From Hydrolagus colliei (taxonomy: Eukaryota): a stretch of DNA of 64,000 bases. The notes under the pieces are model-generated. The model was not told the origin of the DNA, ran no database searches, and saw nothing but the letters and a program-made list of their open reading frames with translations. A program made the translations under genes and the position numbers. Numbering within the stretch: position 1 is the first letter of the stretch; each line of letters starts with the position of its first letter. The stretch lies in contig CM068742.1 of assembly GCA_035084275.1 (NCBI GenBank), positions 79,174,001-79,238,000 on the forward strand, given 5' to 3'. Positions 1,990-64,000 of this stretch are shown piece after piece.

Positions 1990-3166
1990 GTAAGTAATTC
2001 TCTTTTTATTGTTCCTAACTAATGGAAAGTGACCATCATGAAATGCCAGCATCAAATCACTTGAAATATATATCCTCCTATCCACCATTCAAATGGAGAA
2101 ATGAATGACTCAAAATGAAATTCATCCACATGGCCCCTTGCTGAGCTTCACAGTGCCTCCGTAACTTTTGTTTTCTTAAAAGAAGCACAAAGCAGCTAAA
2201 AGTGAACGTTTGCTAAACTAACCGATCAGATCCAATGTGGGTAATTTTAGGTTTACAGTTTAGGACCTAAAACTTTAGGTTTGCTGCTTATCTCTTTGCT
2301 GCAAAGGATCTCCTCGCTTAGTTTTCAATTGAAGTTTCCTAAATGTGTGTACATAGCACGCTTGAATTGAGGTATAAAATAAAAACCTATTCTGTCATTA
2401 CTGCAATTTCCAGTGCAAACACACCACATTAAGATTAATATAATTCTCCAAATCTCATAGCATTCATCCTCAACTCCCATCTTTCCCATACATGTTTCAA
2501 TGTATTCAGATTGCACAGAAACAAGACGTGTTCCTTTTTAGCTACTTAGCGAAGTTATTCAATCCTGTGTTAGACTATAGTGTGGAACATAAAAAGTATA
2601 TGTACATACACACTGGGTGACCCCAAAATTATGATGTCTACCCTAGTTTTAAAAAATCATAATTTATTAAGGCTTATTAGACATTGTAATGGTATCATGA
2701 CTTTTTAGTCACCTTGCATGTGTGTGTAGATATATATAAACATATAATATGGGAGTATTTGCCCCTTATTGAGATATTTCCCAACCTTTGACCGTGTGCA
2801 GTTTCAATGGTAATGTGTGAATGAAGTCCCACATTGTGAACCTGTGGGAATCACTCCTTGTTTGTTGCAAAAGTCATTGTCAGTGACTGATAATGTAATT
2901 GAAGGTTAACATCTTAAATTTGGCATCACCTCATTGGTACATCACTATTCAATGTCAGGCATGATGTACAATACGAGTCTTGTCCATTCACCCAAGTTTC
3001 GGTTATGAAAAGAGCAAGTTGCACAGCACAGCAGTTGCGCTGGTGAGAGTGGTGCACTTTTTATGCACGTACGATAATTGAAGATGATTTTTTTCCACAT
3101 CGACCTTTACTCAGGGTCACTGAACAGAACTGAAGTACAGTATTGTTACTGTCATTTTCTCAACAG

Positions 3167-3272
3167 AGATTTGAGGAGAATCGGTGTGAGCCTTGCTGGC
3201 CACCAGAAGAAGATCATGAATAACATTCAGGAACTCAGGGTCCAGCTTATGAATGGCAGCATGGCCATGTGA
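3167..3272 (+). CDS. EPHA5: EPHA5-like last coding exon: SAM C-terminus and PDZ-binding tail
   Basis: TTTTCTCAACAG acceptor ending 3166; splices in frame with the previous exon (GA|A = Glu). Encodes [34 protein letters not shown], versus EPHA5 [34 protein letters not shown] (recalled). TGA at 3270-3272. Confidence 0.9.
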
Positions 3273-5339
3273 CTCGGTCCCTACACCTCAAGATACCGCT
3301 CGTCAATTAGCACTTTTTTTTTTCAGAACTGAAACTTGTATTTATTCACTCCTCGGGAGAAAAGGAAAAGGGAAGATCTGTACCGACCTGTAATGGGATT
3401 TTAAAAAATCACCCTCCATGGATCAGCATTTAAATTGCTTCCACTATTTCCATGAATTTCATATTCATCCAAAAACGAGAGGGAAGAATGCGGAAAGAAA
3501 GTTTAAAATGGGGGCATTTCACCTATTTCCCTCCCAAGTGAAGCAGCACTACAAACTTTGCCACTTCACTTGTTTCTAAGAAGGTCTCTACAGCACCTTT
3601 GTCATTTTGTTTTGCAGTCAACGCCTGTGATTCTCCTGTGAAAGGAATTGACTGTCTTTATAAACCAGTTTCCACGGATTCAGAGATAGCAGTAGAACAA
3701 CAATAGTTTACGTACGTTTACTGTATCGAGTCTCAATGACTTACAGTGGTGTATTGAAGAGCAATATATATTTATGTTTACTACTTGGTAGTGATTTCTT
3801 TGTAAATTATAAGTGAGGTTATGACATGTATTTAATAAGTTATAGAAAGTAGTGTATAAAGTCTTCGCTTGAATCAGTCTTGATCAGTATGTATTTATTA
3901 ATTGAAATGGTATCAGATGTAATGAAACCCGTTATTTGAAAACGTATACATTTACTTTGCCCTGGCATTATATGTATATACTGTACAGTTTGCTACTGCG
4001 GGTACAGATTTTTTTCTGTGTAACATCTGCTTAAATGTATGAGTTTCATGTGGGTTTGGCTAAAAAAAATGAGTGCTGCATATTTGTAAAATGTCATGAT
4101 GAGAGTTCCTTAAACTTTAGAGTTTACAACCCTGCTTCCATTTTTTGGAATAGTGTGTGCCACACCAATGTGTTTTTGTAATAGTATTGGTTAAATGGCT
4201 TCAATGCTCAGATACGTGGAATAGAAAGTGCTCACATTCTTCCCCGATATCATGGTGAAAATCAAACAGAGTTGTAGGAAATTGGCTAGGTCACGAATGT
4301 GATGCTCTTTCAATCATCTTTGCCATTATTTGTCAGGCAACACCAACGGCAATTTTTTTTAAAAAAAACAATGTTTTATCTTGAATAGCAGGTGAGCTGC
4401 TTTGACTAACGGTACACAGATACCAAGGAGCCCAATTTAAATATATCTACATAGTAATTTAATTCCAGACCCATGTTGCTTGTATTTGAATAACTGTGTT
4501 ACAGAAATGTAATGGAGTAGAGATGGAAGATGGATAAATTAATGTCTTAAAAGGACATTTATTTAGCTCACATCAACTTAAAGGAAAACTCCAGACCTCT
4601 GCATAAAATATATTTTCAATGTTGCTTGGGGCGCATTGAGCTGCATTTCTGTTTAGCATTATATACTTTTTTTAACGATTATAAAACAGTTTTTGCTGAC
4701 AAAGCACAAGGATGCAATCATCTGGGCAATGTTAGGAGCAAGACAATGATTATCAGCGAGAGTCAGATGCATTTTGCTAACCTATTTAGGAGTTTGAAGC
4801 TGTCTTTGTTTTGCGGAAAGAGATTCAACGAAATAGATCACTTTCTTAAACCAAGAGTCCAAGTGAGCAAGACATGACAGTTTTGCATTTTGTTTGCAAA
4901 TGCACGCAGATCATTCATTTTGTCTTTTGGTGCTTTCTGGGTCTAGGTGCTAAAATCAGCACGAAGCTAATGGTTGACTTGCATCAGACACTTTGACGGA
5001 TTTGTTAGAAACACTTGTAGATCTGCTGTTTGTGCCATAGACTGGCTACAGACTTTCAACCCCAAAGCATCCCCTTTCTATTCCAGGTTCTAAGATAAAA
5101 ATTGTGCTGCAGATCTATAACCTCCAATATTTATTTACTGTATCATTCACTTGTATTGTGACAGGCATGGTGCTTCGTATAAATGTATGGTTAGCCATTT
5201 TACTTTTTGTTTAACGTCTTAATTTGAAGAAAGAGATTATTGTGAAACCAAGGTATTAGATCTGGGCTTTTAGGACTGGGTCACTTTAGTTGAACCTATC
5301 TACACAGAGGAAAGGATTTTGAAAGGGATTTGATAGGCG

Positions 5340-5600
5340 CAGCGGGTTATCGTAGTGTCCTTTCACCCCGAAACATCCCATAATAGTGGGATGAACATCT
5401 CTCTCTCTGCTTGTTGTAATGGTCTCATGAATTGATGTTGATCAATCTCACACCAAGTGGGTTTGGATTTTTAATGGAACTAAACCTCTACCCAGAATTT
5501 GGCACTGAATTTTGGCATTCTCACTCAATGAGGCTGGAGCATGGTTGGTGTGACAAAAACAGAAATCATATTGATGTTATAGGGGAAGAGGGTGCTGAGA
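5340..5600 (+). mobile_element. Old SINE remnant resembling LF-SINE-related shark SINEs, inside the 3' UTR
   Basis: CTTTCACC..., GGGATGAACATCTC..., AATTTGGCACTGAATTTTGGCATTCTCACTCA resemble the LF-SINE-like body (TTGGCACTAATTGGCA); highly diverged. Confidence 0.35.
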
Positions 5601-5722
5601 AAAAGCATACCCCCACCACCTTCGCACACCAATGGATGTCTCACCTTGTTAAGCACAGAATGTTGCTTTTAAAGCCTTAGCAAGCAACTTCCAGAAACAA
5701 GCACATCATTTGAGAAAGCTCA

Positions 5723-5975
5723 AAAAACAAAAGCAAAATACTACAGATGCTGGGAATCTGAAACAAAAACAAAAGTTGCTGTGGAAACTCAGCAGGTCAG
5801 GCAGTATCCATGGAGAAAGGAAAAAGAGTCAACAGAGTTCTAACGAAGGGTTGTAGACCCGAAAAGTTGACTCTTTTTCCTTTCTCCATGGATGCTGTCT
5901 GACCTGTTGAGTTTCCACAGCAACTTTTGTTTTTGTTTCAGATTCCCAGCATCTGTAGTATTTTGTGTTTTGTTT
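5723..5975. mobile_element. Palindromic Penelope-like (inverted pseudo-LTR) short element with 15-bp TSD
   Basis: Arms 5734-5833 and 5866-5965 are reverse complements (97/100). ATTTGAGAAAGCTCA is duplicated at 5708-5722 and 5976-5990. The arm sequence GATGCTG..TGACCTG.TGAGTTT...CCAGCATCTG resembles shark Penelope pLTRs. Confidence 0.8.
5834..5874 (+). ncRNA. Degenerate minimal type I hammerhead ribozyme motif
   Basis: Stem I AGAGTT/GACTCT; core CTAACGA (canonical CTGANGA); stem II GGGT-TGTAG-ACCC; GAAA; AGTT (sibling copies have GAAACGTT). Two core substitutions. Confidence 0.55.
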
Positions 5976-6741
5976 ATTTGAGAAAGCTCACTGGACTCCA
6001 CATGTACTATCTGGCATTCAAAGCTGTGACCATTCAAAGTTGTTAGAACATTGCAGGTATAGAAAAAAATATATTGCTTGAAATTGAACTTAGATTGACT
6101 TAAAAAAAACTATATTCTGAATTCAATAACAATACAATGTACATGTGTGTGGGGGTAGGGAGAATGGGGTGGGGCAGAAGAAGAGGGGAGAATGGAATAT
6201 AGAACCAGACTAATTCACAAGTGAGATGGAGGAGCTAGGATTCATTCTCCGATGCACAGATGAGATTAGGGTGATTGTCCAGATTGGTGTGAAATATCTA
6301 ATTTAACGTTTAAAATTTATTATGCTTAGTTTGACGAGTGCATCTAGAAAAATAAATGGAGGACTATGGTCGTAAGCAATCCCATGTTAATTATTAAAGC
6401 ATTAAGTATCATCACATGGAGCTTTCCTTTAAATTATAGAAATGATTGCAATTATACACCAGCCTGATATTGCACAAAATCTTGCTTATCAGGGTTATAA
6501 GTGATTGACAGTGAATTGTGTGAGAATGTAGAAGGAAGCATAAAATGCATTAGTATTTAGTAATTTGTACTTGGATTCAAACTGTTGAGGAAAATATCAT
6601 TTTCTCATTCAGAACTGAACAATAGGCAACATTTGATGCTGATATTTACTATATAACAACAAATCACATATTAATACTATTAAAAACAAAATATTTGTTT
6701 CAACCATTTACCTGTACTATAATACTAAGTGAAGCTTTCAT

Positions 6742-11228: not shown

Positions 11229-11548
11229 GTCATGTAGCTCAGTGCCTAGAGCACTCACCTCGCAAGTGAGAAGCCTGGGTTTGATTCCCGAGCAGGCCAA
11301 CATGTTGGGTCCTTAGTTCACATGCTTTGTTTGGTAAACAATGAAATAGAGAATTATTTTGTCCTGGTATTCTGGCCAACCAATTCCTCAAATAGGAAAA
11401 TCATTACTTTCATGGCTATTTGTGGTACCTTGCTATGCACAAAATGTCTGACCTGTTTGTCGAAAGTGTATACTTGTCAGTAATTCCTTGTGAAGCGATT
11501 GTGATATTGATAGGCACTATATCAAATGCAAGAATCCTTATTTATTAT
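11229..11548 (+). mobile_element. Diverged tRNA-derived SINE
   Basis: GTAGCTCAGTG..TAGAGCACTC head, GGGTTTGATTCCC B-box, tail CACTATATCAAATGCAAG. Confidence 0.65.
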
Positions 11549-13946: not shown

Positions 13947-14300
13947 GTGATTAGAACACTTGCCTCACAAGTGAGAGATAGACCTTGGTTAAATTTCTGT
14001 TAAGGCGAAAAGTTGGGTAATTTTCCTTACTCCACACACACCTCTGTTTACCTAGCAGTCAGTAGGAACCCAGTTGTTAGTCGATTGGTGGATTGCTTTT
14101 CCGTGGATAATAATTCCTTTAAAAAATAATAATTTGGTCACTTCAATTCATGATTGTTTCTGGGACACTGCTGTGCGCATTTGGCTGCCGTGTTTTGCCC
14201 ACAAAAAATAGTCAATTTATTTTACAGTATATTCTATCCAGCATTTTGAAACGTCTTAAAGACATGATATACTGCCATTTCAAATGCAAGAATCATTATT
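13947..14300 (+). mobile_element. tRNA-derived SINE, long subfamily
   Basis: Contains the internal block CCTCTGTTTACCTAGCAG..AGTAGGAACCCAGTTGTTAGTCGATTGGTGGAT and the family tail. Confidence 0.85.
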
Positions 14301-14714: not shown

Positions 14715-15029
14715 AATAATAATAGTAATAATAATCTTTGCATTTGATATAGCGCTTTCCACATCTTCTAGCTCTTCACAGAATATAGTGTAAAGTGATT
14801 TGACTGTATATTTGTGGACAAAATGCGACAGCCAATTGCGCTCAGCAGTGTCTTGCAAACAGTCATGGATTGAAATGACCAATTTTATTATTGTTTTTTT
14901 TTGGAGGGATTATTATTAGGCTTGTGGAGTAAGGAAACTTGCCTAAGGTTTTGCCCTGACTTGCTTGGATTCGAACACAGGTCTCATGCTTATAAGGCAA
15001 GTGTTCTAACCAATGAGCTACAGGACTCC
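14715..15029 (-). mobile_element. tRNA-derived SINE, short subfamily
   Basis: Full head GGAGTCCTGTAGCTCA..GGTTAGA, B-box GTTCGAATCC, (ATT)n tail; lacks the internal block. Confidence 0.85.
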
Positions 15030-22555: not shown

Positions 22556-23010
22556 TTGATATTAGTTATGAGCTGTTTAAGCATTTTTAGTGCTTAGTGC
22601 TTATGTAAGCATAAAACTTGCAAACCAATCATTCAGACTGATTCTGTAAACCTCCCTGCATTTAGGGGTTAAATGTATTGTAAACTCACTAAACTCTAAT
22701 TACAGAACAAGAGATGAAGAGATTTGGAAGCATTGCCACAACTGCAGCCTTATTATTATCTGCTTTCCTAGTTGCTCAGTACCATATGTTTATGGTGCCA
22801 AACCAGCAACAAAAAGGCACTCCATGAGAAGTAATCTTATCCTTTGTTCATTCTAGAGTCCTATTGTTTAGCCTCTTTTCTTACCAAACGAAAGATGAAT
22901 ATAACCATCTTCAAGCAGCAATGATTATGACATGTTCTTTCCAGACATTTCACCTTGGAGCCAGTTCAGCTCCAAGGAGACCCACCCAACTCCCCCACCA
23001 ACGAGGATCA

Positions 23011-23262
23011 TCCTGTAGCTCAGTGGTTAAAGCACTCACCTCGCAAGCAAGAGACTTGGGTTCGATTCCCAGCAGGGCAAAATGTTGACCAAGTTTCCTT
23101 ACTCCATACGCCTCTGCTTAACTAGCAATAAGTTGGAATCCAGTTGTTAGTTGATTCGCAGATTGCTTCTCCAGGGGTAATAATTCCTTAAAAATAATCA
23201 TTTGATCATTCAATCCACAATTGTTTGTGGGACACTGCTGCAGGCAATTAGCTGGAGTGTTC
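23011..23262 (+). mobile_element. tRNA-derived SINE, long subfamily, 3' truncated
   Basis: A-box TAGCTCAGTGG and B-box GGTTCGATTCC intact. Confidence 0.8.
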
Positions 23263-24436
23263 AAGATCCAATGCATCATGGATGAATATATCAAATAAGA
23301 TGGTTGGCAATGGACAGTCCAGTCTTTCAAGAGTGATAGGCCTGATGAGTCTACCAACAACCCTGACAACAATTTTTAAGGCTGCAGTATACATGCTGAT
23401 TAAAATCTAAAATGTGGCCATGTCTCAACCTAATTAAGAACAATCCATGCTTTTTAAAACTAAATAGTACGAGTTTTATTTCTATATTTCAGGAAACAAG
23501 TTATGAAATAAATTGAAAGAACAACATTGTATATAACCCAGTCTACAATAATTCAATTGACTGGGTTTGGAAAAATACTTATTAAGCCATGGGTTATTTT
23601 TGAGAGTATCTGATAGTGCCAATCTTCAAGATTGACAGGTACTGACGGGACCCAGTAAACATATTTGGAGAATTGGCAGACACGTAAACAATCATGTCAT
23701 TCAGAAGCATTTTTAAATTAAGAAGCGTTTCATGAAATATGACAAGTCTTTCCTGATGGTTACTGCTGACAGAAAACACAGCAGCTGCCTCCCAGAGAGC
23801 TGCAATCATCTGGGTATCCCAACCTCCCGCTATCAATCAGCTCATGTCCTTCAGCTCTTCATTCACTCCTACACCGATCTGCCACGCATCAATGATTTTC
23901 AAATATTCCTGACAATTATCATGCTTCTGAAGCTAGTAAGAGGAGCAGAGGTGAATTCATAAAAATTGATATGGATTATTAGATTTTTTCATTATTAAGT
24001 GGCTTAATGCTTTGAGACATTGTGGCTGATATTAAGCAAAATCATTATTTTTTTTTCAAAATGACTGATTGACACTGGATGCTACTCATCTGGAGCTCCT
24101 GTAAGATCAGCTTCAATAAAACTACCCTCTCTCCCTGAAGGCTGCAGGAACCAAAGTTATTCTAAACTATAGAAGCCAAATTTAGAACACTCCAAGCCTT
24201 TAAAAGGACATAGATAAAACTGGGCAGGGTTCGGTGAAAGGTGACTGGGAATAAGAGTTTCCCAGTTATAAGGAAAGGCTGAAAGATTGAGGGAGAGATG
24301 AGCTACAATCTTAATAAACTCTGGTGCAAACCCTTCACTATCCAATGCCTTGGGACGTCCTCCTGAAATTATATGAATGCAACCTGTTGTTCTTGTTTGT
24401 TGTTGAAACTTTAAAGCTGAGTACTGAGGTGCACAG

Positions 24437-32805: not shown

Positions 32806-33114
32806 TAATAATATAAATCGTCCTTGCATTTGATATAGTGCTTGTCATGTCTTCTAGACGTCTCAAAGCACTTCACAGAATATACTGTAAAGTGAATTGA
32901 CTGTATTTTTGGGGGGCAAAACACAGCAGCCAAATTGCACACAGCAGTGTCCCACAACAATCGTGGATTGAAATGACCAATTATTAATAATTTTAGCGAT
33001 TTTTGTTAGGCATGTGGAATAAGGAAAGATGCCCAAGGTTTCGCCCTGCCTGGAATCAAACCTAGGTCTCTCGTTTGCAAGGCGAGTGCTCTATCCACTG
33101 AGCTACAGGACTCC
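32806..33114 (-). mobile_element. tRNA-derived SINE, short subfamily
   Basis: Head GGAGTCCTGTAGCTCAGTGGATAGAGCACTCGCC; no internal block. Confidence 0.85.
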
Positions 33115-33299
33115 ACAAAGAGTAAGGCTAATACCAAGATGACACGGCAGAACATTGCTACAAATCAGAGATTCTAATATACACAAAAATACAAGATTAG
33201 TTCAGATGAAGAAGCCTCTTTTGCCCCATCTGATGTCAATCCCAACAGAATGCCCACTCGACTGTTCTCCCATCACAGCAACAAACAGCAATTTAAATG

Positions 33300-33518
33300 A
33301 AATGCAAAATACTGCAGATAAGAACATAAGAAATGCTAGACAAAAAAAGACCAAAGTCCATCTAGTTTACCTTCCTGGCAGTTGCATGCACATATGTCTC
33401 AGCTGCTGGAAATCTGAAACAAATGCAAAGTATGCTGGGAACACTCAGCAGGTCAGGCAGCATCTATGGAGAAAGGAAAGCGGGTCAACGTTTCGGGTTG
33501 ATGACCCTACGTCAGAAT
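33300..33518 (-). mobile_element. Penelope-like short element with hammerhead-like motif, interrupted by a ~80 bp CR1-type tail (~33320-33402)
   Basis: Minus strand reads TTCTGACGTAGGGTCATCAACCCGAAACGTTGAC...GATGCTGCCTGACCTGCTGAGTG. The element end (AAAATACTGCAGAT, 33306-33319) is separated from the rest by AAGAACATAAGAAATG.... Confidence 0.7.
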
Positions 33519-34084
33519 CACTTGTCACTCACCATGTCAAAACAGTGTGAAACAGCAATAAACAAGGCAAACAGGGCTATGTTATTAAATCAGTTCAGAT
33601 ACACAGGAAATACAGTATACCATGGCTGTATGTGAGATATCGCTGTGCACAAATGGCATTTGACTCCAAAATAGATAATTGCTACATTTTATAGTGAACT
33701 TGTCACAGATTGGGAGTGAATCCTGTCAATGGTTGGGAGAGGATGTCTCATTCTTTGATATATTCTGCCTATGTGAAAGATATTCAAATTCAAAGCTTAT
33801 TATTATTTGGCTGACTCCATGAACAAGAACAAGAAAAGGAAGCAATATATTCAAATACCTCTAGCTTGTTGAAAGTTCTCACAAATGTATCTCCAAAAGA
33901 AACCAAGCTGAAATGTCCAGGAAATTGTTTGTTTTGCGCAAAAGCTTGTTTTGCAAGCTCATTTTAGCCCCTCAGGAAACTGAAACGATGAAACACAGCC
34001 AGCAAAGGAAATGATCCACACAGCACTGAAAACAGCTGTTTGGAGCACTGAACACTGATTCACCGTGGGGAGAAATTGAATATC

Positions 34085-38189: not shown

Positions 38190-38307
38190 GAGCGAAAGAC
38201 AGAGCGAAAGACAGAGCGAAAGACAGAGCGAAAGACAGAGCGAAAGACAGAGCGAAAGACAGAGCGAAAGACAGAGCGAAAGACAGAGCGAAAGACAGAG
38301 CGAAAGA
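38190..38307 (+). repeat. Perfect 12-bp tandem repeat (GAGCGAAAGACA) x ~9.8
   Basis: Directly visible with no mismatches. Confidence 0.95.
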
Positions 38308-42105: not shown

Positions 42106-42196
42106 CTTGTGTTCACAAAAGTGGGCTCCAGATAACATTGCCTCAAGATTGGGAGATTTCTCTGTTTCAGTCGAAGATCAGTAGAGATTACGAAAG

Positions 42197-42330
42197 CAAA
42201 ACACAAAATACTAGAGATGCTGGAAATCTGAAACTAAAACAGAAGTTGCTGGGGAAACTCAACAGGTCAGGCAGCATCCATGGAGAAAGGAAAAAGAGTC
42301 AACGTTTCGGGTCTATAATTCTGTCAGAAC
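42197..42330 (-). mobile_element. Penelope-like short element (single arm) with 14-bp TSD and degenerate hammerhead
   Basis: Close match to arm 5734-5833. TSD AGAGATTACGAAAG (42183-42196) / AGAGATTAGGAAAG (42331-42344). Minus strand begins GTTCTGACAGAATTATAGACCCGAAACGTTGACTC. Confidence 0.8.
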
Positions 42331-43914
42331 AGAGATTAGGAAAGGTTTAGTTAAGGTGGACATTGAGAGATTGTTTATACTTTATTCTTTATATTGTTCA
42401 TACATTGTTCTCATGATGCATACATGAGAGAGAAGGGAATAGAGAGGGATAATAAAAGAATATGGAGGGGGTTGAGGAGAAAAAAAAATCTGCACAGTCT
42501 AGTTGGGACAAATAGCTTGTTTCTATTGTGGTCTCAGGGAATTACTGGACTCATCACTCACAATGTAAAAACATGTGTGGCAGCAAAAATCAAGCCAACC
42601 AGGAAGCCAGGCTATATAGTTAACACAGTTGAGTTCAGATCCCAAGATGTTATACTATGGCTTTATAGTGCTTAATAGTGTTCAAGCTTAAAAGTGGCAT
42701 ATTCTCTCCGTAAACAAAAGAAGATCACCTGTAAGTCACTCTTTCAACCCCAGTATTTGCTGATTTAGCAGCTCTCAATCCCCAGCATGCACTGAATTAG
42801 TTTATAACAAATTGCCAAATTTCAAACGTGTTCAGTACAAACTCTGTTTTGGCATACAATAGATTTTGCACACTGACCAAAGCTCAAAGCTCTTCAATAT
42901 CTAACAAGAACAAGTCAATGACTTCTAAGCTATTATTCACAGAACAAGATTCACAACAAAGAGAAGTAATGCTGTTGTGCATTCAAATATATGGCTACTG
43001 ATCCAACTCCCTTTTTAGATGAAGCTCGTTCATCATCATTATGTTATTCCGTGTACACAATGTGTCAGGCTGTGCAATTTGTACTTCTCCTCAATTTAGA
43101 GAATGAGCTGTCTTTGTTCACATGTCACAGAACGCTGTAGTTTAGATGTGTGATGAGAAGAATAGATTGATTATTCACCAACTAATTATTCTTGTATTTA
43201 AAGAGCCATTGTCAAGGACGAGAGCCAAAACCTAATACCCCCATTGTGAAGAGCAGCCTTTAACAACAGTGTCAAAGCTGTGATTGCATTATACAGTGGG
43301 CTCTTTAACCTTCAGATCCCTGGAAATATGCCCCAGTGAAAATTCTCAAATAGCAGGTGAAGGGCATTTGCATGTTCATCAAGCCAATAATCCACATGCT
43401 GCAGCGAATGCCAATGGCTTGGTTTCTAGAAAGCATATGGTCTCCCAACATTTTTGACTGTATAAGTTCACTTTTTTTTCACAAAATAAGCCTTTCACAG
43501 AATCTTACCGTAGCACAAAGGGAAGCAATTTAGCCCATCATGCCTATGCTGGCTCTTTAAATAGCGCCAACTAGTCCCATTCCCAATCTCTTTGCCCATA
43601 GCCAAGTAAATTCTTCATTTTTAAGTACCTACCCAATTCCATTTTAAAAGCTATTATCGAATCTGCTTCCAACAGCCTTTCAGATAGTGCATTCTCTACT
43701 TATAAAACCAAGGATCCCATACACTTTTTTAACCACTTTGTCAACTTGTCCTACCACCTTCAAAGATTTGTATATGTGAATTCCCAGGTTTCTCTGTTCC
43801 TGCACCCACTTTAAAATTGTTTGATTTATCTTATATTGCCTCTCCTCATTCTTCCTCCCAAAATGCATTACTTCATACTTGTCTGCATTATGGAGTCCTA
43901 TAACTCAGTGGTTA

Positions 43915-47985: not shown

Positions 47986-50212
47986 ACAACAACAACTTAA
48001 ACTTATAAAGCGCCTTTCACATCGGGAAGACGTCCCAAGGTGCTACACAGGAGGCGTGTGACCCGAGCTGGGAGGGGAATATTCGGGAAGGGGTGAAACA
48101 CGGAGGGGAGGTCAAAAAATTCGGGGGCGGAAACAAAAGGCACGGTCAAAGAGGAAAGTCTTTAAACCGGCCTTGAAAGAGGAAAGGGAAGAAACAAGGT
48201 GGAGGGATTGGGGGATGGAATTCCACAGGATGGGAGCAGAGAAACTGAAGGCCCGGCCTCCTATGGTGGGGCGGTTCGGGCTGAGGGCTTCGAGCAGGCC
48301 AATTCCTGCTGAACGGAGGGTTCGGGTGGGCTTATAGGGGGAGAGTAAATCAGTTAAATAGGGCGGGGCAAGGCCGTGTAAGGCCTTGAAGGTTAGGACG
48401 AGGATCTTTAACTCGATCCTCTTGAGGATGGGGAGCCAGTGGAGACGGGCAAGGGTGGGGGTTATATGGTCGTGGAGGCGGGTGCGGGATAATACATGGG
48501 CTGCAGAGTTTTGGATGACCTGCAGCCTGTGAATAGAGGAGCTGGGGAGGCCGACGAGGAGAAAGTTTCCTTAGTCCAGCCGTGAGGTGATGTACGCGTG
48601 CACGAGTGTTTCGGGAGCATGCGGGGTGAGATAGTTGCGGAGCCTGGCAATGTTGCGTAGGTGGAAATAAGCGGTGCTGGTCAAGGCACGGATGTGGGGG
48701 AGGAAGGAGAGTTTATGGTCGAACGTGATTCCAAGGTTCCTGATTGGCTTTGTGAGGTGGAGCGTACAGCCTTGGAAGTTGAGGCTGGCAGCGCCCGATG
48801 TGCGGAGGTGCTGGCTTGAGCCAATCAGGAGGGCCTCGGTCTTGCTCACGTTCAATTGGAGAAAGTTGTCACTCGTCCAGGGCTCAATGTCGGACAGACA
48901 TGCTGTCAGAACATCGATGGTCTGGGGGTTGAGGGATGAGGCAGAAAGATACAGCTGGGTGTCGTCCGCATACATGTGGAAATTTGCCCCATGTTTGCGG
49001 ATGACATCGCCCAGAGGGAGCGTGTAAATGGTGAAACAGAGGGGGCCGAGGACAGAGCCCTGAGGGACGCCGTGAGAAACTGTGCGGGGGTTTGAGGAGA
49101 AACCGTTGGAAGATACAAAATGTAGGCAATGGGTCAGGTAGGAATGGAACCAGTCAAGGACTGTGCCTTTAAGGTTGAGGTGGGAGGAAGGACGTTGGAG
49201 GAGGATGGTGTGATCGACTGTGTCGAATGCAGCAGACAGGTCAAGGAGGACGAGGAGGCAGAGGGAGCCCTGGTCGCAGGCGGTTAGGATGTCGTTTGTA
49301 ACCATAACGAGGGCAGTTTCCGTGCTGTGAGCAGGGCGGAAACCTGATTGGAGGGGTTCAAGGAGTGAGTGAGGTGAGAGGAAAGAGCAGAGCTGGGAGG
49401 CAACCACTCTGTCATGGACCTTAGATAAAAACGGGAGGTTGGAGATGGGTCGGTAGCTTGATGGCTGCGACGCATCAAGGGAGGGTTTTTTCAGGATAGG
49501 GGTGATGGTGGCTGTTTTAAGGGAGGTAGGGATGGTGCTTGAGGAGAGGGAAAGGTTGATGGTGTCAGAAATGAGCGGGGCCAAAAGGTGGAGCTGGGTG
49601 TGGAGGAGTGGGGTGGTGATGGGGTCCAATGAACACGTGGTGGGTTTCATGGAGGTGATTATTTTTGTGACTGAAGACGGGGAGGTGGGGATGAAAGTAT
49701 GAAAGGGGGGGGGGTGGGTGGGGGTTGAAATAACGGATGGAGGGGCGGAGGTGGAGGAGAGGTGGGGGGAGGAAACCACAGAACGGATTCTCTCTATTTT
49801 GGACTCCAGGAAGTCCAACGTCTCCTAACAACGTTCGTTTGAAGAGAGGATCTGCGAAGCGAGACGGTGGGGGCGGAGGAACTGGTTGGTGGTGGCAAAG
49901 AGGAGGCGGTGGTTGTCCTTCGCTTCCAGGATTATCCTGGAGTAGAAGGCTAATTTGGCGGTGGCTAGGGCGGAGCGGTAAAATTTGATGCGGTCCAGCC
50001 AGATTTGCCGGTGGACCGTGAGGCCAGATTTGAGCCAGGTGCGTTCAGCTGCTCTCACTTGGCTTTTGAGGGAATGGAGGTGAGTTGTGTACCACGGTGA
50101 TGATCGGGAGTGGGAGACGGTTCTGGAGGTGAGGGGGGCCAGGGTGTCGAGGGTAGTGGAGAGGGTGTTATGGAGGGTGGTGGAGGCGGAGGATGGGTCG
50201 GTACAGGAAAAA
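47986..50212 (-). mobile_element. L2 LINE, 5' truncated, with full reverse-transcriptase domain (pseudogenized)
   Basis: ORF 48571-49818: YRPISNLPFLSK, QSGFRPAHSTETAL, LLDLSAAFDTVDH, GVPQGSVLGP, YADDTQLY. Nonsense codon at 48571-48573, frameshifts upstream, (TGT)n tail. Confidence 0.95.
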
Positions 50213-53916: not shown

Positions 53917-55084
53917 TAAGGTCCGGCGATATATCGCTAAAACCCGATATAATTTTCACATCGATACACCGATATAGGCATTTCAAAAATATCGATATAC
54001 TGGAAAATCGATATATCGAGGTAAAAAATCGGAATGCATGCACACTGAACTACAAGACCCAGAATGCTCATCTCTATACACAATGCACAGACCAAGGTGC
54101 AAAGCTGCCATATTGTATTCATAGTCCTCAAATACAATATACAGGTATGCAAGGGGTGGGGGGGGAAGAGACGGCTGGGGGGAGGGTGAGGGGGAGAGAG
54201 ACGACTGGTGGGGGGGGGTGAGTGGGAGAGAGACAGCTGGGGCGTGGTGGGGGGGAGAGAGATGGGTGGGGGGAAGAGAAACGGCTGGGGGGGGGGTTGG
54301 CCAAGGGGTGGGGGGGGAAGAGACGGCTGGGGGGAGGGTGAGGGGGAGAGAGACGGCTGGGGGGTGGTGGGGGGGAGAGAGATGGGTGGGGGGAAGAGAA
54401 ACGGCTGGGGGGGGGTTGGTGGGGAGAGAGAGTCGGCGGTGGTGTGTGTGGGGGGGAGAGAGAAACGGCGGGGGGGGAGGGGCAAATAAATGGCTGGGGG
54501 GTGGTGGTGGGGGGAGAGAGAGACGGCGGTGGGGGAGGGGGAAAGAGACGGCTGGGGGGCGAGAGAGACGGCGGGGGGGGGGGGAAGGAGAGGGAGATGG
54601 CTGTGGGGGAGGGGGAAAGAGATGGCTGGGGGGCGAGAGAGACGGCGGGGGGGGGGGAAGGAGAGGGAGATGGCTGTGGGGGAGGGGGAAAGAGACGGCT
54701 GGGGGGCGAGAGAGACGGCGGGGGGGGGGAAGGAGAGGGAGATGGCTGTGGGGGGTGTGGAGGGAGAGGGACAGTGGGGGGGAGGGGTGGGGGGGAGAGA
54801 CGGGGTGGATGTGATAATATACAGATAGATAGAGATGGGAGGGATGTGAGAGAGACACAGAGACACCGACAGACAAACACAGAGATGGAGAGAGTGAGAG
54901 ACACAGAGAAATAAAGATATTTACCTCCCGAGGAGATAGGCCCCGAATGCGCACGCACCCCGAATGCGTGCGCAGCGCGTGCATGCGCAGTACAAAAACC
55001 CCGGAAATATCGATATTTCGGTATATCTCGATATGAGCCCGTTGATATATCTAAATCAGAACATTTCCATATCGACGGACCCTA
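53917..55084. mobile_element. Non-autonomous hAT (Ac-like) element with G-rich minisatellite interior
   Basis: TIRs TAAGGTCCGGCGATAT / ATATCGACGGACCCTA (14/16); 8-bp TSD CTATTAAT (53909-53916) / CTATTATT (55085-55092); subterminal CGATAT/ATATCG repeats. Confidence 0.88.
54152..54808 (+). repeat. G-rich compound minisatellite (GAGACGGCTGGGGGG-based)
   Basis: Repeated GAGAGACGGC(T)G(n) units with runs of 5-12 G, arranged in higher-order blocks. Confidence 0.9.
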
Positions 55085-57110: not shown

Positions 57111-57487
57111 TACTGCAGCTCCGTGGTTAGAGCACTCGCCTCATAAGCGACAGATCTGGGTTTGATTCCCAACAGGGCAAAATGTTGGGCAAGTTTCCTT
57201 ACTCCACAACCCTCTGTTTACTTAGCAGTAAGTGCAATACGTAACAAATATGTTAGTCGATTGGCTGATCGCTTTTCTGGGGTAATAATTCTTTCAAAAA
57301 GTGACAATAATTAATTGGTCATTTCCATCCACGACTGTTTCTGGAACACTGTTGTGCGCAATTGACTGCTGTATGTCACCCACAAAATATACATTCAATT
57401 CACTCTGCTATTTGTTCTGTGAAGTGCTTTGAGACGAGTCAATGATGTGATATGGTGCTATATCAAATGCAAAGATTATTATTATTA
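57111..57487 (+). mobile_element. tRNA-derived SINE, long subfamily
   Basis: Full-length copy with internal block and (ATT)n tail. Confidence 0.85.
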
Positions 57488-62981: not shown

Positions 62982-64000
62982 AAGTTGGTAAGGAGGCAGA
63001 GGGCATGGGTGATGTACTGAATGAGTACTTTGTCGCTGTCTTCACAAGAGAAGAGGATGCAGCCAATGCTACAGTATTGAAGGAGAGGGTAGAAGAAATG
63101 GATAGGATTAGTAATAAATAGAGCGGAAATACTAAAAAGGTTGACGGCGCTCAAGGTAGATAAGTCACCCAGTCCCGATGGGATGCATTCTAGGTTACTA
63201 AGGGAAGTGTGGGAGCAAATAGCAGAGACTCTGGCCACAATCTTTCAATCTTCCTTGGACACAGGAGTGGTGCCAGAGGACTGGAAGGTTGCTAATGTTA
63301 CTCCTCTGTATAAAAAGGGGCAGAAGGACGAACCTGGGAACTACAGGCCAGTCAGTCTTACGTCAGTAGTGGGCAAACTTCTAGATCTTCACTTAGAAAG
63401 ATATAGGCTAATAAAGGACAGCCAGCATAGATTTGTTAAAGGCAAATCTTGCCTTACAAATCTAATAGAATTTTTCGATGAGGTAACGGAATGGGTGGAC
63501 GAGGGCAGCGCAGTTGATGCAGTTTACATGGATTTTCAAAAGACATTTGACAAAGTGCCACATGAGAGGCTTAGTAGGAAAGTAGCGGCCCACGCCGTTA
63601 AAGGAACAGTGGCAGCATGGATCCACAACTGGCTGTAAGACAGAAAGCAGAGAGTTGTGGTGAGCAGCTGTTTTTCAGATTAGAGGGAAGTGTGCAGTGA
63701 TCACACCCACTTTTTGGGACCACTATTCTTCCGAATATATATTAATGATCTGGACTTGGGTATAGGGAGCACAGTTTCCAAGTTTGCAGATGATACTAAG
63801 TTAGGAAGAAGAGTAAATAGTGAGGAGGATAGTAACCATCTACAAGAAGATTTAGATAAAATGGTAAAGTGGGCAGACACATGGCAGATGAAGTTTAATG
63901 CAGAGAAGTGTGAGGTGTTACGTTTTGGGAGAAGAAATGAGGGGAGGCAATATAGGCTAGATGGTACCATTTTAAGGGGTGTGAGGGGACAGAGAGCCTG
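62982..64000 (+). mobile_element. CR1 LINE ORF2 reverse-transcriptase region (decayed, runs off the window)
   Basis: LNEYFVAVFT, KSPSPDGMH, PEDWKVANVTPLYKKG, NYRPVSLTSVVGK, SCLTNLIEFF, VYMDFQKTFDKVPH, FADDTKLG; in-frame stops and deletions. Confidence 0.93.

What the first reader, a model, noticed from the sequence alone, without database searches (positions are those of the whole stretch)
5723..5975. 100-bp RNA hairpin with a hammerhead-like loop inserted in the EPHA5 3' UTR
Seen: arms 5734-5833 and 5866-5965 pair over 100 bp with only three non-Watson-Crick positions. All three are G.U wobbles on the sense (mRNA) strand and would be A.C mismatches on the antisense strand. The element is flanked by a perfect 15-bp TSD and lies between the stop codon and the candidate poly(A) signals. 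Known: long 3' UTR dsRNA is a substrate for ADAR editing, Staufen binding and Dicer. Inference: a young insertion may have given this neural receptor mRNA a lineage-specific dsRNA regulatory module. Three wobbles is only suggestive, about 1 in 8 by chance for transitions.
Basis: partly seen in the sequence, partly recalled or inferred. Interest (0 to 1): 0.8.

Follow-up and report, generated by a model that had tools for sequence, protein, structure and literature searches.

The report
Penelope-type retroelement hairpin in Eph UTR
The 253-base hairpin is real, but it is best read as one insertion of a small hammerhead-bearing, Penelope-type retroelement that landed as two copies head to head, a known habit of that class, and a regulatory role in the receptor mRNA is untested.

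Summary
Arms 5724-5833 and 5866-5975 pair. Within 5734-5833/5866-5965 there are exactly three non-Watson-Crick positions, all G.U on the + strand. A perfect 15-bp duplication flanks the unit.

The arms are two copies of a ~134-139-nt dispersed retroelement. Two solo copies lie elsewhere in the window, one with its own 14-bp duplication. The right copy is full length. The left is inverted and lacks the first ~30 nt.

The loop is therefore the head of the full copy. It carries a decayed minimal hammerhead motif of the kind described for Penelope-like elements. No Rfam hammerhead model matches it.

Head-to-head pairs with one shorter copy and a single duplication are a published Penelope signature. 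One such enzyme extends both cut strands in vitro.

Lying in the 3' UTR of an EphA5-like gene is plausible: no poly(A) hexamer occurs on + from the stop to 6350.

Earlier, unchecked notes of this scan report the same family and hairpin forms elsewhere in this genome.

The parts
5708..5722 (.). left copy of the 15-bp target-site duplication ATTTGAGAAAGCTCA
   Evidence: family D1, 100% identical to 5976-5990
5723..5833 (-). inverted copy of the retroelement lacking the first ~30 nt (no hammerhead core); its T-rich 3' tail is at the outer, left end
   Evidence: nhmmer match to family profile positions 30-136, E 1.4e-33; alignment
5834..5836 (+). three junction bases (AGA) that belong to neither copy; with 5837-5839 they form the 5' strand of a 6-bp helix I
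   Evidence: alignment of the four units; descriptor hit with helix I = 6
5837..5975 (+). full-length copy of the retroelement (139 nt) in the sense of the mRNA strand, starting at the same base as the two solo copies
   Evidence: nhmmer positions 2-138, E 8.5e-45; alignment
5834..5874 (+). decayed minimal hammerhead motif: helix I 5834-5839/5869-5874, core 5840-5846 (reads CUAACGA, one departure from CUGANGA), bulged A 5847, helix II 5848-5852/5856-5860, GAAA 5861-5864, predicted cleavage position after 5868
   Evidence: only hit of the relaxed descriptor in both strands of the window; features compared with the description in PMC4209133; no Rfam hammerhead match
5976..5990 (.). right copy of the target-site duplication
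42197..42330 (-). solo 134-nt copy of the same family, flanked by a 14-bp duplication (42183-42196 / 42331-42344, 13 of 14)
33393..33517 (-). older solo copy of the same family (80-83% to the finding)
3165..3272 (+). last coding exon of the Eph receptor gene (end of the SAM domain) with stop at 3270-3272; exon start inferred from the acceptor AG at 3165-3166
   Evidence: best solved-structure match EphA5 5zrz_A, E 1.7e-09
3273..6350 (+). stretch without any AATAAA or ATTAAA on the sense strand: the likely body of the 3' UTR, which holds the element
   Evidence: 0 on + against 9 on -; shuffle mean 4.48; 1.2% of 500 shuffles with 0

Best explanation
The 253-bp unit is one integration event of a short (~135-nt) non-autonomous retroelement. 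The head of that element is a minimal hammerhead motif of the type carried in the terminal repeats of Penelope-like elements (PLEs).

The event left two copies head to head, with their 3' tails at the outer ends, inside one 15-bp target-site duplication. The + strand copy (5837-5975) is full length. The - strand copy (5723-5833) lacks the first ~30 nt. The 32-nt loop is therefore the single-copy head of the full unit.

The most likely route is inferred, not shown. The staggered cut gave two 3' ends, each primed reverse transcription at the 3' end of an element RNA, and the two cDNAs were joined by a template jump, leaving 3 extra bases. Self-priming (snap-back) is a variant of the same reading.

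The long hairpin is thus a by-product of how this class integrates. If the host gene's 3' UTR runs through it, which is likely but unproven, every mRNA carries a ~110-bp near-perfect duplex. By general knowledge of double-stranded-RNA-binding proteins, such a duplex would be open to ADAR, Staufen or Dicer. Nothing here shows that this is used or selected.
For: Family and solo copies:
- 4 units at 3 loci match the family profile with E <= 1.4e-33; the next best match has E 0.009 (blastn).
- The solo copy 42197-42330 has its own 14-bp duplication, 13 of 14 identical. The unit of transposition is therefore the monomer, and target duplications of 14-15 bp are the family's habit.
- All 3 full-length units start at the same base.

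A single event:
- One perfect 15-bp duplication encloses both copies, and no inner duplication was reported.
- Both outer ends are the element's 3' tail.
- The tails differ at 4 of 12 columns against 3 of 99 in the body (Fisher p 0.0024). The right tail matches the 42-kb copy and the left does not. This favours two separate primings.

The motif:
- The relaxed minimal-hammerhead descriptor has 1 hit in both strands of 64 kb, in the loop. In shuffles, 3 of 20 gave one hit, mean 0.15.
- A bulged base before helix II, a 2-nt insert in place of helix III and a short helix I are the traits listed for PLE hammerheads (PMC4209133, Results).
- The three units carry different lesions in the core, as expected for decay from an intact ancestor.

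Literature:
- PLE insertions are 5'-truncated and often have an adjacent inverted 5'-truncated copy (PMC8557442, passages).
- Head-to-head is the commonest arrangement. An inverted terminal repeat 37 bp shorter than the direct one lies within one duplication (PMC3846280, passages).
- A purified PLE protein cleaves and extends both strands, unlike R2 and LINE-1 (PMC11167929, passage).
- Animal hammerhead repeats are non-autonomous PLE derivatives, and those that overlap exons sit mostly in 3' UTRs (bioRxiv 10.64898/2026.07.22.740005, Results part 1).
Against: - No PLE coding sequence is in the window. The two reverse-transcriptase ORFs (48571-49818, 63141-63638) match only the general RVT_1 family. 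The one compared with solved structures (48571-49818) is closest to LINE-1 and R2 proteins. None of the neighbouring ORFs has a Pfam match, and no GIY-YIG domain was seen. The link to PLEs therefore rests on motif and architecture, not on a shared sequence with an autonomous element.
- No Rfam hammerhead model matches any of the 3 heads, even at E up to 10.
- The isolated loop folds no better than shuffles.
- An intact-core descriptor has 0 hits in the window.
- The duplications of 14-15 bp are longer than the 8-10 bp reported for rotifer PLEs.
- Only 3 loci could be examined.
- A scan of metagenome contigs for the family's head found nothing.
- The constant 5' start of the full units lies 3 nt before the core. 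It is not the predicted cleavage site, and it is unexplained.
Confidence: 0.8

Rival explanations
1. One reading: the hairpin is a lineage-specific double-stranded RNA module of the EphA5-like mRNA. It would be kept by selection and act through ADAR editing, Staufen binding or Dicer processing.
For: The duplex is very stable on the sense strand (-195.4 against -179.0 kcal/mol on the antisense strand). It persists in a 901-nt context (109 arm pairs). All 3 arm differences keep pairing as G.U on the sense strand. The element lies in a stretch with 0 poly(A) hexamers on + against 9 on -, consistent with a transcribed 3' UTR.
Against: 3 of 3 wobbles has p = 0.125. By outgroup, at least 2 are plain C-to-T changes on +. 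A strand-biased mutation process or chance gives these equally well. The architecture is fully explained by the integration mechanism. Earlier, unchecked notes report similar hairpins elsewhere in the genome, which argues against a design specific to this gene. No RNA evidence of any kind was obtained.
Confidence: 0.1
2. A LINE-dependent SINE-like element (L1, L2 or CR1 partner) that was inverted by twin priming during target-primed reverse transcription.
For: Duplications of 14-15 bp are typical of L1-type integration (recalled). LINE-type reverse-transcriptase ORFs are present in the window.
Against: Twin priming, as I recall it, gives an inversion of adjacent element sequence, not two copies of the same 3' end. 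Here both outer ends are the same 3' tail. The tail is T/G-rich, not poly(A). The element has no tRNA, 7SL or 5S head: Rfam gives no such match over 5500-6200. Instead it has a hammerhead-type head.
Confidence: 0.07
3. A miniature inverted-repeat or fold-back DNA transposon, whose natural form is the hairpin. The solo copies would then be half elements.
For: It has 110-nt terminal inverted repeats and a flanking duplication.
Against: The solo 134-nt copy has its own 14-bp duplication at both ends, so the monomer transposes by itself. All full-length units share one defined start. A 15-bp duplication is longer than any DNA-transposon superfamily that I recall. The two 'repeats' are unequal, one lacking the head.
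Confidence: 0.02
4. Two steps: one copy inserted next to or into another, or a later local inverted duplication.
For: The arms differ at 3 of 100 body positions and more in the tails. Different source copies could explain this.
Against: There is only one duplication, perfect and enclosing both copies. No second duplication lies at the inner junction, which holds just 3 extra bases.
Confidence: 0.03

Closest known systems
Inverted (head-to-head) pseudo-LTR pairs of Penelope-like elements, for example Pen2a_Av of Adineta vaga (PMC3846280; PMC8557442)
   Same: Two copies of the element's terminal region lie head to head. The inverted one is some tens of bases shorter. One target-site duplication surrounds the whole, and a hammerhead motif sits in the repeat.
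   Different: There is no coding body between or beside the repeats: the whole insert is 253 bp. The duplication is 15 bp rather than 8-10 bp. No 30-40-bp 'tail' extension was recognised. The autonomous partner was not found.
Minimal hammerhead ribozymes of metazoan PLEs (Cervera and De la Pena 2014, PMC4209133)
   Same: It has the CUGANGA-type core, an unpaired base before a longish helix II, GAAA, a 2-nt insert in place of helix III, a short helix I and a dispersed solo occurrence.
   Different: In this copy one core position departs from the required letter, and the 2-nt insert is no longer palindromic. Helix I's 3' strand is locked in the 110-bp stem. Activity is untested.
Non-LTR retrozymes of animals (bioRxiv 10.64898/2026.07.22.740005)
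   Same: It is a short non-autonomous hammerhead-bearing repeat tied to PLEs. Monomers are dispersed, and exon overlaps fall mostly in 3' UTRs.
   Different: Retrozymes are defined by direct tandem units. Here there is no tandem, only solo units and one inverted pair.
Inverted-repeat Alu pairs in human 3' UTRs (recalled; PMC8211916 seen only as a search listing)
   Same: A retroelement-derived long intramolecular duplex in a 3' UTR, a potential substrate of ADAR and Staufen.
   Different: Alu pairs arise from two separate insertions and are imperfect. This duplex was made in one event and is near perfect. Its binding or editing is unknown.
LINE-1 twin priming (recalled, no paper seen)
   Same: Use of the second cut strand as a primer during target-primed reverse transcription, giving an inverted 5' part.
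   Different: Twin priming starts internally and does not duplicate the 3' end. Here both copies include the 3' tail.

Membership tests
Penelope-like element insertion (terminal-repeat derivative) | Hammerhead motif in the terminal repeat | tested here: met
   Descriptor hit at 5840 (+), the only one in the window. The traits match those in PMC4209133. The motif is decayed.
Penelope-like element insertion (terminal-repeat derivative) | 5'-truncated and/or inverted adjacent copy within one target-site duplication | tested here: met
   compared.
Penelope-like element insertion (terminal-repeat derivative) | Sequence shared with an autonomous element that encodes a PLE reverse transcriptase and a GIY-YIG endonuclease | tested here: inconclusive
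   None is present in the window. Other parts of the genome could not be read. Earlier notes mention PLE-like copies elsewhere, unchecked.
Penelope-like element insertion (terminal-repeat derivative) | 30-40-bp 'tail' extension at one end | tested here: inconclusive
   The left tail differs from the right tail and from the 42-kb copy, but no clear extension was seen.
Hammerhead ribozyme | Conserved core CUGANGA ... GAAA ... UH | tested here: not met
   This copy reads CUAACGA at 5840-5846. GAAA and UU are present. The other two units each have a different core lesion.
Hammerhead ribozyme | Match to a curated covariance model | tested here: not met
   0 hammerhead matches in 5 Rfam searches, at E up to 10 locally. 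Whether Rfam's models cover variants without helix III is not known to me.
Hammerhead ribozyme | Self-cleavage | not testable with these tools
   This needs in vitro transcription of monomer and dimer constructs.
Non-LTR retrozyme | Direct tandem repeats of the hammerhead unit | tested here: not met
   No tandem array of the family was found.
MITE / fold-back DNA transposon | The hairpin is the mobile unit, with a duplication length fixed by a transposase | tested here: not met
   The solo 134-nt unit has its own 14-bp duplication.
3' UTR double-stranded RNA element (IRAlu-like) | Transcribed as part of the mRNA | tested here: inconclusive
   Poly(A)-hexamer depletion on + from 3273 to 6350 supports it.
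3' UTR double-stranded RNA element (IRAlu-like) | A-to-I editing, protein binding or small RNAs from the arms | not tested
   No reads were available.
microRNA precursor | Match above a family's gathering score | tested here: not met
   The best matches are mir-2131 at 40.6 bits against 92 and MIR1507 at 39.1 against 73. These are generic long-hairpin matches on both strands.

The most novel reading that the evidence does not exclude
In this lineage, single integration events of tiny Penelope-type elements create near-perfect ~110-bp hairpins at birth. They would then serve as the main source of long intramolecular double-stranded RNA in mRNAs, doing in one step what pairs of Alu elements do in primates. 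On this reading the copy in the EphA5-like 3' UTR is transcribed and tolerated or kept, drifting only through wobble-compatible changes. It would tune the neural receptor's mRNA through editing, Staufen-type decay or small-RNA production.
Probability: 0.1. Interest if true: 0.6.

Novelty: new member of a known kind. Interest (0 to 1): 0.3.

Why it matters
As it stands, this is a clean worked example of a known oddity. Penelope-type integration can leave a complete, very small head-to-head pair. That fits the in vitro finding that such enzymes extend both cut strands.

It also shows that a 'hammerhead in a hairpin loop' need not be a designed RNA device. Here it is simply the head of the one full-length copy.

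It would matter more if RNA data showed two things: that the duplex is carried by the mRNA of a conserved neural receptor, and that it is edited or processed. Such one-step hairpins would then be a ready-made source of double-stranded RNA in genomes that lack Alu-like pairs.

Tried and rejected
Rfam:
- Five searches gave no hammerhead at any of the three heads.
- The microRNA-family matches are far below their gathering scores and occur on both strands, so I treat them as generic hairpin matches.

Folding and descriptors:
- Folding the loop alone gave z -0.27, with no thermodynamic signal.
- The intact-core hammerhead descriptor gave 0 hits in the window.

Search for a PLE partner in the window:
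- Eight ORFs of at least 130 aa and seven shorter neighbours were scanned against Pfam.
- Only two RVT_1 matches were found. The one compared with solved structures is closest to LINE-1 and R2 proteins.

More copies from outside:
- One metagenome scan with the family's head gave 0 loci.
- I did not use the second scan. A pattern short enough to be general (14 bases) would mostly return chance matches.

RNA evidence:
- The run search listed one run of unknown kind and no RNA run.

Small items:
- The candidate 13-bp duplication around the 33-kb copy may be a chance match and was left as such.
- The weak similarity of the tRNA-headed SINE body to the family (E 0.009-0.03) was looked at and dropped.

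Literature limits:
- A paper search for Penelope, shark and hammerhead ribozyme together returned one general review. I found no description of this family in print by that search alone.
- Supplementary files were not opened. These include the minimal-hammerhead alignments of PMC4209133 and the family tables of the 2026 preprint, which has one cartilaginous fish. They may already list this family.
- My impression that the arm sequence resembles an abundant repeat of cartilaginous fishes is recall only and was not tested. The organism was not determined.

Full report
THE OBSERVATION

The feature is in the sequence as described. The repeat finder reports inverted arms 5724-5833 and 5866-5975, 110 nt each, 94% complementary, 32 nt apart. 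It also reports the direct repeat ATTTGAGAAAGCTCA at 5708-5722 and 5976-5990, 15 of 15 identical.

All are G.U on the + strand and A.C on the - strand.

As RNA, 5723-5975 folds at -195.4 kcal/mol on + (z -29.8; 0 of 200 shuffles as good) and at -179.0 kcal/mol on -. In a 901-nt context the long stem keeps 109 arm-to-arm pairs. This is far beyond chance.

WHAT THE ARMS ARE

The arm sequence is a dispersed repeat.
- blastn of the element against the window finds two further loci, 42194-42318 (91-93% identical) and 33400-33517 (80-83%).
- A profile built from the four units finds those same four units at three loci, with E between 8.5e-45 and 1.4e-33. Nothing else scores better than E 0.009.
- The copy at 42197-42330 is a solo unit of 134 nt, flanked by its own 14-bp direct repeat, 13 of 14 identical.

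The mobile unit is therefore the monomer, and it inserts with a 14-15-bp target duplication.

Aligning the four units shows the following.
- The + strand copy 5837-5975 is full length and starts at the same base as the two solo copies.
- The - strand copy 5723-5833 lacks the first ~30 nt.
- Both copies carry the T/G-rich 3' tail, and the two tails sit at the outer ends of the insert.
- Three bases (AGA, 5834-5836) at the inner junction belong to neither copy.

The hairpin is thus a head-to-head pair inside one duplication. Its loop is simply the head of the only full copy.

THE LOOP

On the + strand the head reads as follows.
- Helix I 5' strand AGAGUU (5834-5839).
- Core CUAACGA (5840-5846).
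- An unpaired A (5847).
- Helix II GGGUU/GACCC with a 3-nt loop (5848-5860).
- GAAA (5861-5864).
- A 2-nt insert, then UU (5865-5868).
- Helix I 3' strand GACUCU (5869-5874).

I wrote a relaxed descriptor for this layout. It allows at most one mismatch in the core, an optional bulge, helix II of at least 4 bp, GAAA, an insert of 0, 2 or 4 nt, U-H, and helix I of at least 3 bp. It hits both strands of the 64-kb window exactly once, here. Three of 20 dinucleotide shuffles gave one hit, mean 0.15.

These traits are the ones listed for hammerheads of Penelope-like elements in the Results of PMC4209133: a type I layout, a long helix II with an unpaired base at its 5' end, a short helix I, and no helix III or only a 2-nt palindromic insert.

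Against this:
- The core of this copy departs from the required pattern at one position.
- The two solo copies each carry a different core lesion.
- An intact-core descriptor has 0 hits in the window.
- No Rfam hammerhead model matches any of the three heads, even at E up to 10.
- The isolated loop folds no better than shuffles (z -0.27).

I conclude that the loop is a decayed relic of a minimal hammerhead, not an active ribozyme. In the hairpin RNA its helix I 3' strand is also sequestered by the long stem.

WHAT IS KNOWN ABOUT SUCH ARRANGEMENTS

- PMC8557442, passages: PLE insertions show much 5' truncation. [quoted passage not shown]
- PMC3846280, passages: a rotifer element has an inverted pseudo-LTR 37 bp shorter than the direct ones inside one 9-bp duplication. 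Head-to-head is called the most frequent arrangement, self-priming is discussed, and terminal repeats alone are shown to suffice for integration in trans.
- The 2026 preprint 10.64898/2026.07.22.740005, abstract and Results part 1: animal hammerhead repeats are argued to be non-autonomous PLE derivatives. They occur as dispersed monomers, and the few that overlap exons tend to lie in 3' UTRs.

HOW IT MOST LIKELY AROSE (INFERRED)

A staggered cut 15 bp apart gave two 3' ends. Each primed reverse transcription on the 3' tail of an element RNA. One cDNA reached the RNA's 5' end and the other stopped about 30 nt short. A template jump joined them, leaving three extra bases.

Two separate primings are favoured by the tails. 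They differ at 4 of 12 columns against 3 of 99 in the body (Fisher p 0.0024). The right tail equals that of the 42-kb copy, while the left does not.

Snap-back self-priming would give the same overall shape and cannot be excluded. Tail slippage after insertion could also explain the tail differences.

GENE CONTEXT

Two + strand exons encode the SAM domain of an Eph receptor.
- 1808-1993 matches EphA5 chain 5zrz_A residues 5-46, E 5.2e-12.
- 3078-3269 matches residues 45-78 of the same chain, E 1.7e-09.
- EphA6 and EphA7 follow as the next-best matches.
- The stop is at 3270-3272.

The exons were searched apart and not joined.

The element starts 2,451 nt after the stop. From 3273 to 6350 there is no AATAAA or ATTAAA on the + strand, against 9 on the - strand. 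Shuffles average 4.48, and 1.2% of 500 reach zero. Only 2 of 122 sliding windows of that length have zero on +, and both overlap this stretch. The first hexamers follow at 6351 and 6393.

This is indirect support that the 3' UTR runs through the element. I put that at about 0.6.

Direct evidence failed. The run search listed one run of unknown kind and no RNA run. I worked beside that stretch and did not look for this gene in other collections.

THE WOBBLE ARGUMENT

Three of three has p = 0.125 one-sided. By comparison with the two solo copies, the changes at 5805 and 5898 are both C-to-T on the + strand. The third, at 5907, is ambiguous because the family itself varies there.

Chance, a strand-biased mutation process in a transcribed region, and selection for pairing all fit equally well.

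WHAT IT DOES

The best-supported reading is that the hairpin is a by-product of integration with no shown function.

If it is transcribed, a ~110-bp near-perfect duplex in a 3' UTR is the kind of substrate that ADAR, Staufen and Dicer accept. That is general knowledge, recalled: among papers I saw only a search listing. This remains a hypothesis with roughly 0.1 probability of being a used or selected function.

RIVALS

- A fold-back DNA transposon is contradicted by the solo unit with its own duplication.
- LINE twin priming does not duplicate the 3' end (recalled), whereas here both tails are present.
- Two separate insertions would leave a second duplication, and none was reported.

EARLIER NOTES OF THIS SCAN

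All of these are unchecked by me unless stated.
- The same window's hammerhead core and the 134-bp unit were noted (s1-903133, s1-903146). I re-derived both independently.
- A follow-up on other DNA of this genome called such units decayed PLE tails that all start at the same base (s1-138833). I see the same constant start in 3 of 3 full units.
- Four notes describe hairpin or palindromic forms of 213-244 letters elsewhere (s1-901833, s1-903143; s1-903759, s1-902574). If true, these make this hairpin one of a recurrent class.

VERDICT

This is a real, well-defined feature, and a new member of a known kind: a Penelope-type head-to-head micro-insertion with a decayed minimal hammerhead. It probably lies in the 3' UTR of an EphA5-like gene. 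Interest is 0.3.

Still unexplained:
- What sets the constant 5' start, which lies 3 nt before the core rather than at the predicted cleavage site.
- Where the three junction bases come from. They happen to complete a 6-bp helix I.

Noticed in passing
window 33041-33112 (-), 23009-23080 (+), 11233-11294 (+), 57113-57175 (+), 14956-15027 (-), and four weaker hits: Nine tRNA-like matches in 64 kb (five above Rfam's gathering score; ARAGORN calls four). Where I read on (23009-23290), a non-tRNA body follows, so these are heads of a tRNA-derived SINE family rather than tRNA genes.
   Followed up: partly
window 23078-23108 and 13999-14036: The SINE body just after the tRNA-like head shows weak similarity (E 0.009 and 0.03) to positions 17-54 of the hammerhead-headed family (GAAA..GTTGAC..TTTCCTT..CTCC). 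It may be chance or a shared module.
   Followed up: partly
window 48571-49818 (-) and 63141-63638 (+): Reverse-transcriptase ORFs (RVT_1, E 1.2e-32 and 1.6e-11). The first is closest to LINE-1 ORF2 and R2 proteins among solved structures, and no endonuclease domain was found in neighbouring ORFs. On the - strand, 46.5-51.5 kb lacks poly(A) hexamers.
   Followed up: partly
window 54153-54784: A G-rich minisatellite block with periods of 29-147. It accounts for the overlapping long ORFs on both strands at 53937-54984, which have no Pfam match.
   Followed up: partly
window 38190-38307: A perfect 12-nt tandem repeat, GAGCGAAAGACA, 9.8 copies, 100% matches.
   Followed up: no
window 33288-33551: The older family copy seems to carry an ~84-bp internal insert between its tail piece (about 33300-33316) and the rest. 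A candidate 13-bp direct repeat (33275-33287 / 33552-33564, 12 of 13) would bound a 264-bp unit, but this could be a chance match.
   Followed up: partly
window 5973-5978: The junction of the element's right end with the target duplication creates TTTATT on +, that is AATAAA on the - strand. No poly(A) hexamer is created on the sense strand.
   Followed up: no
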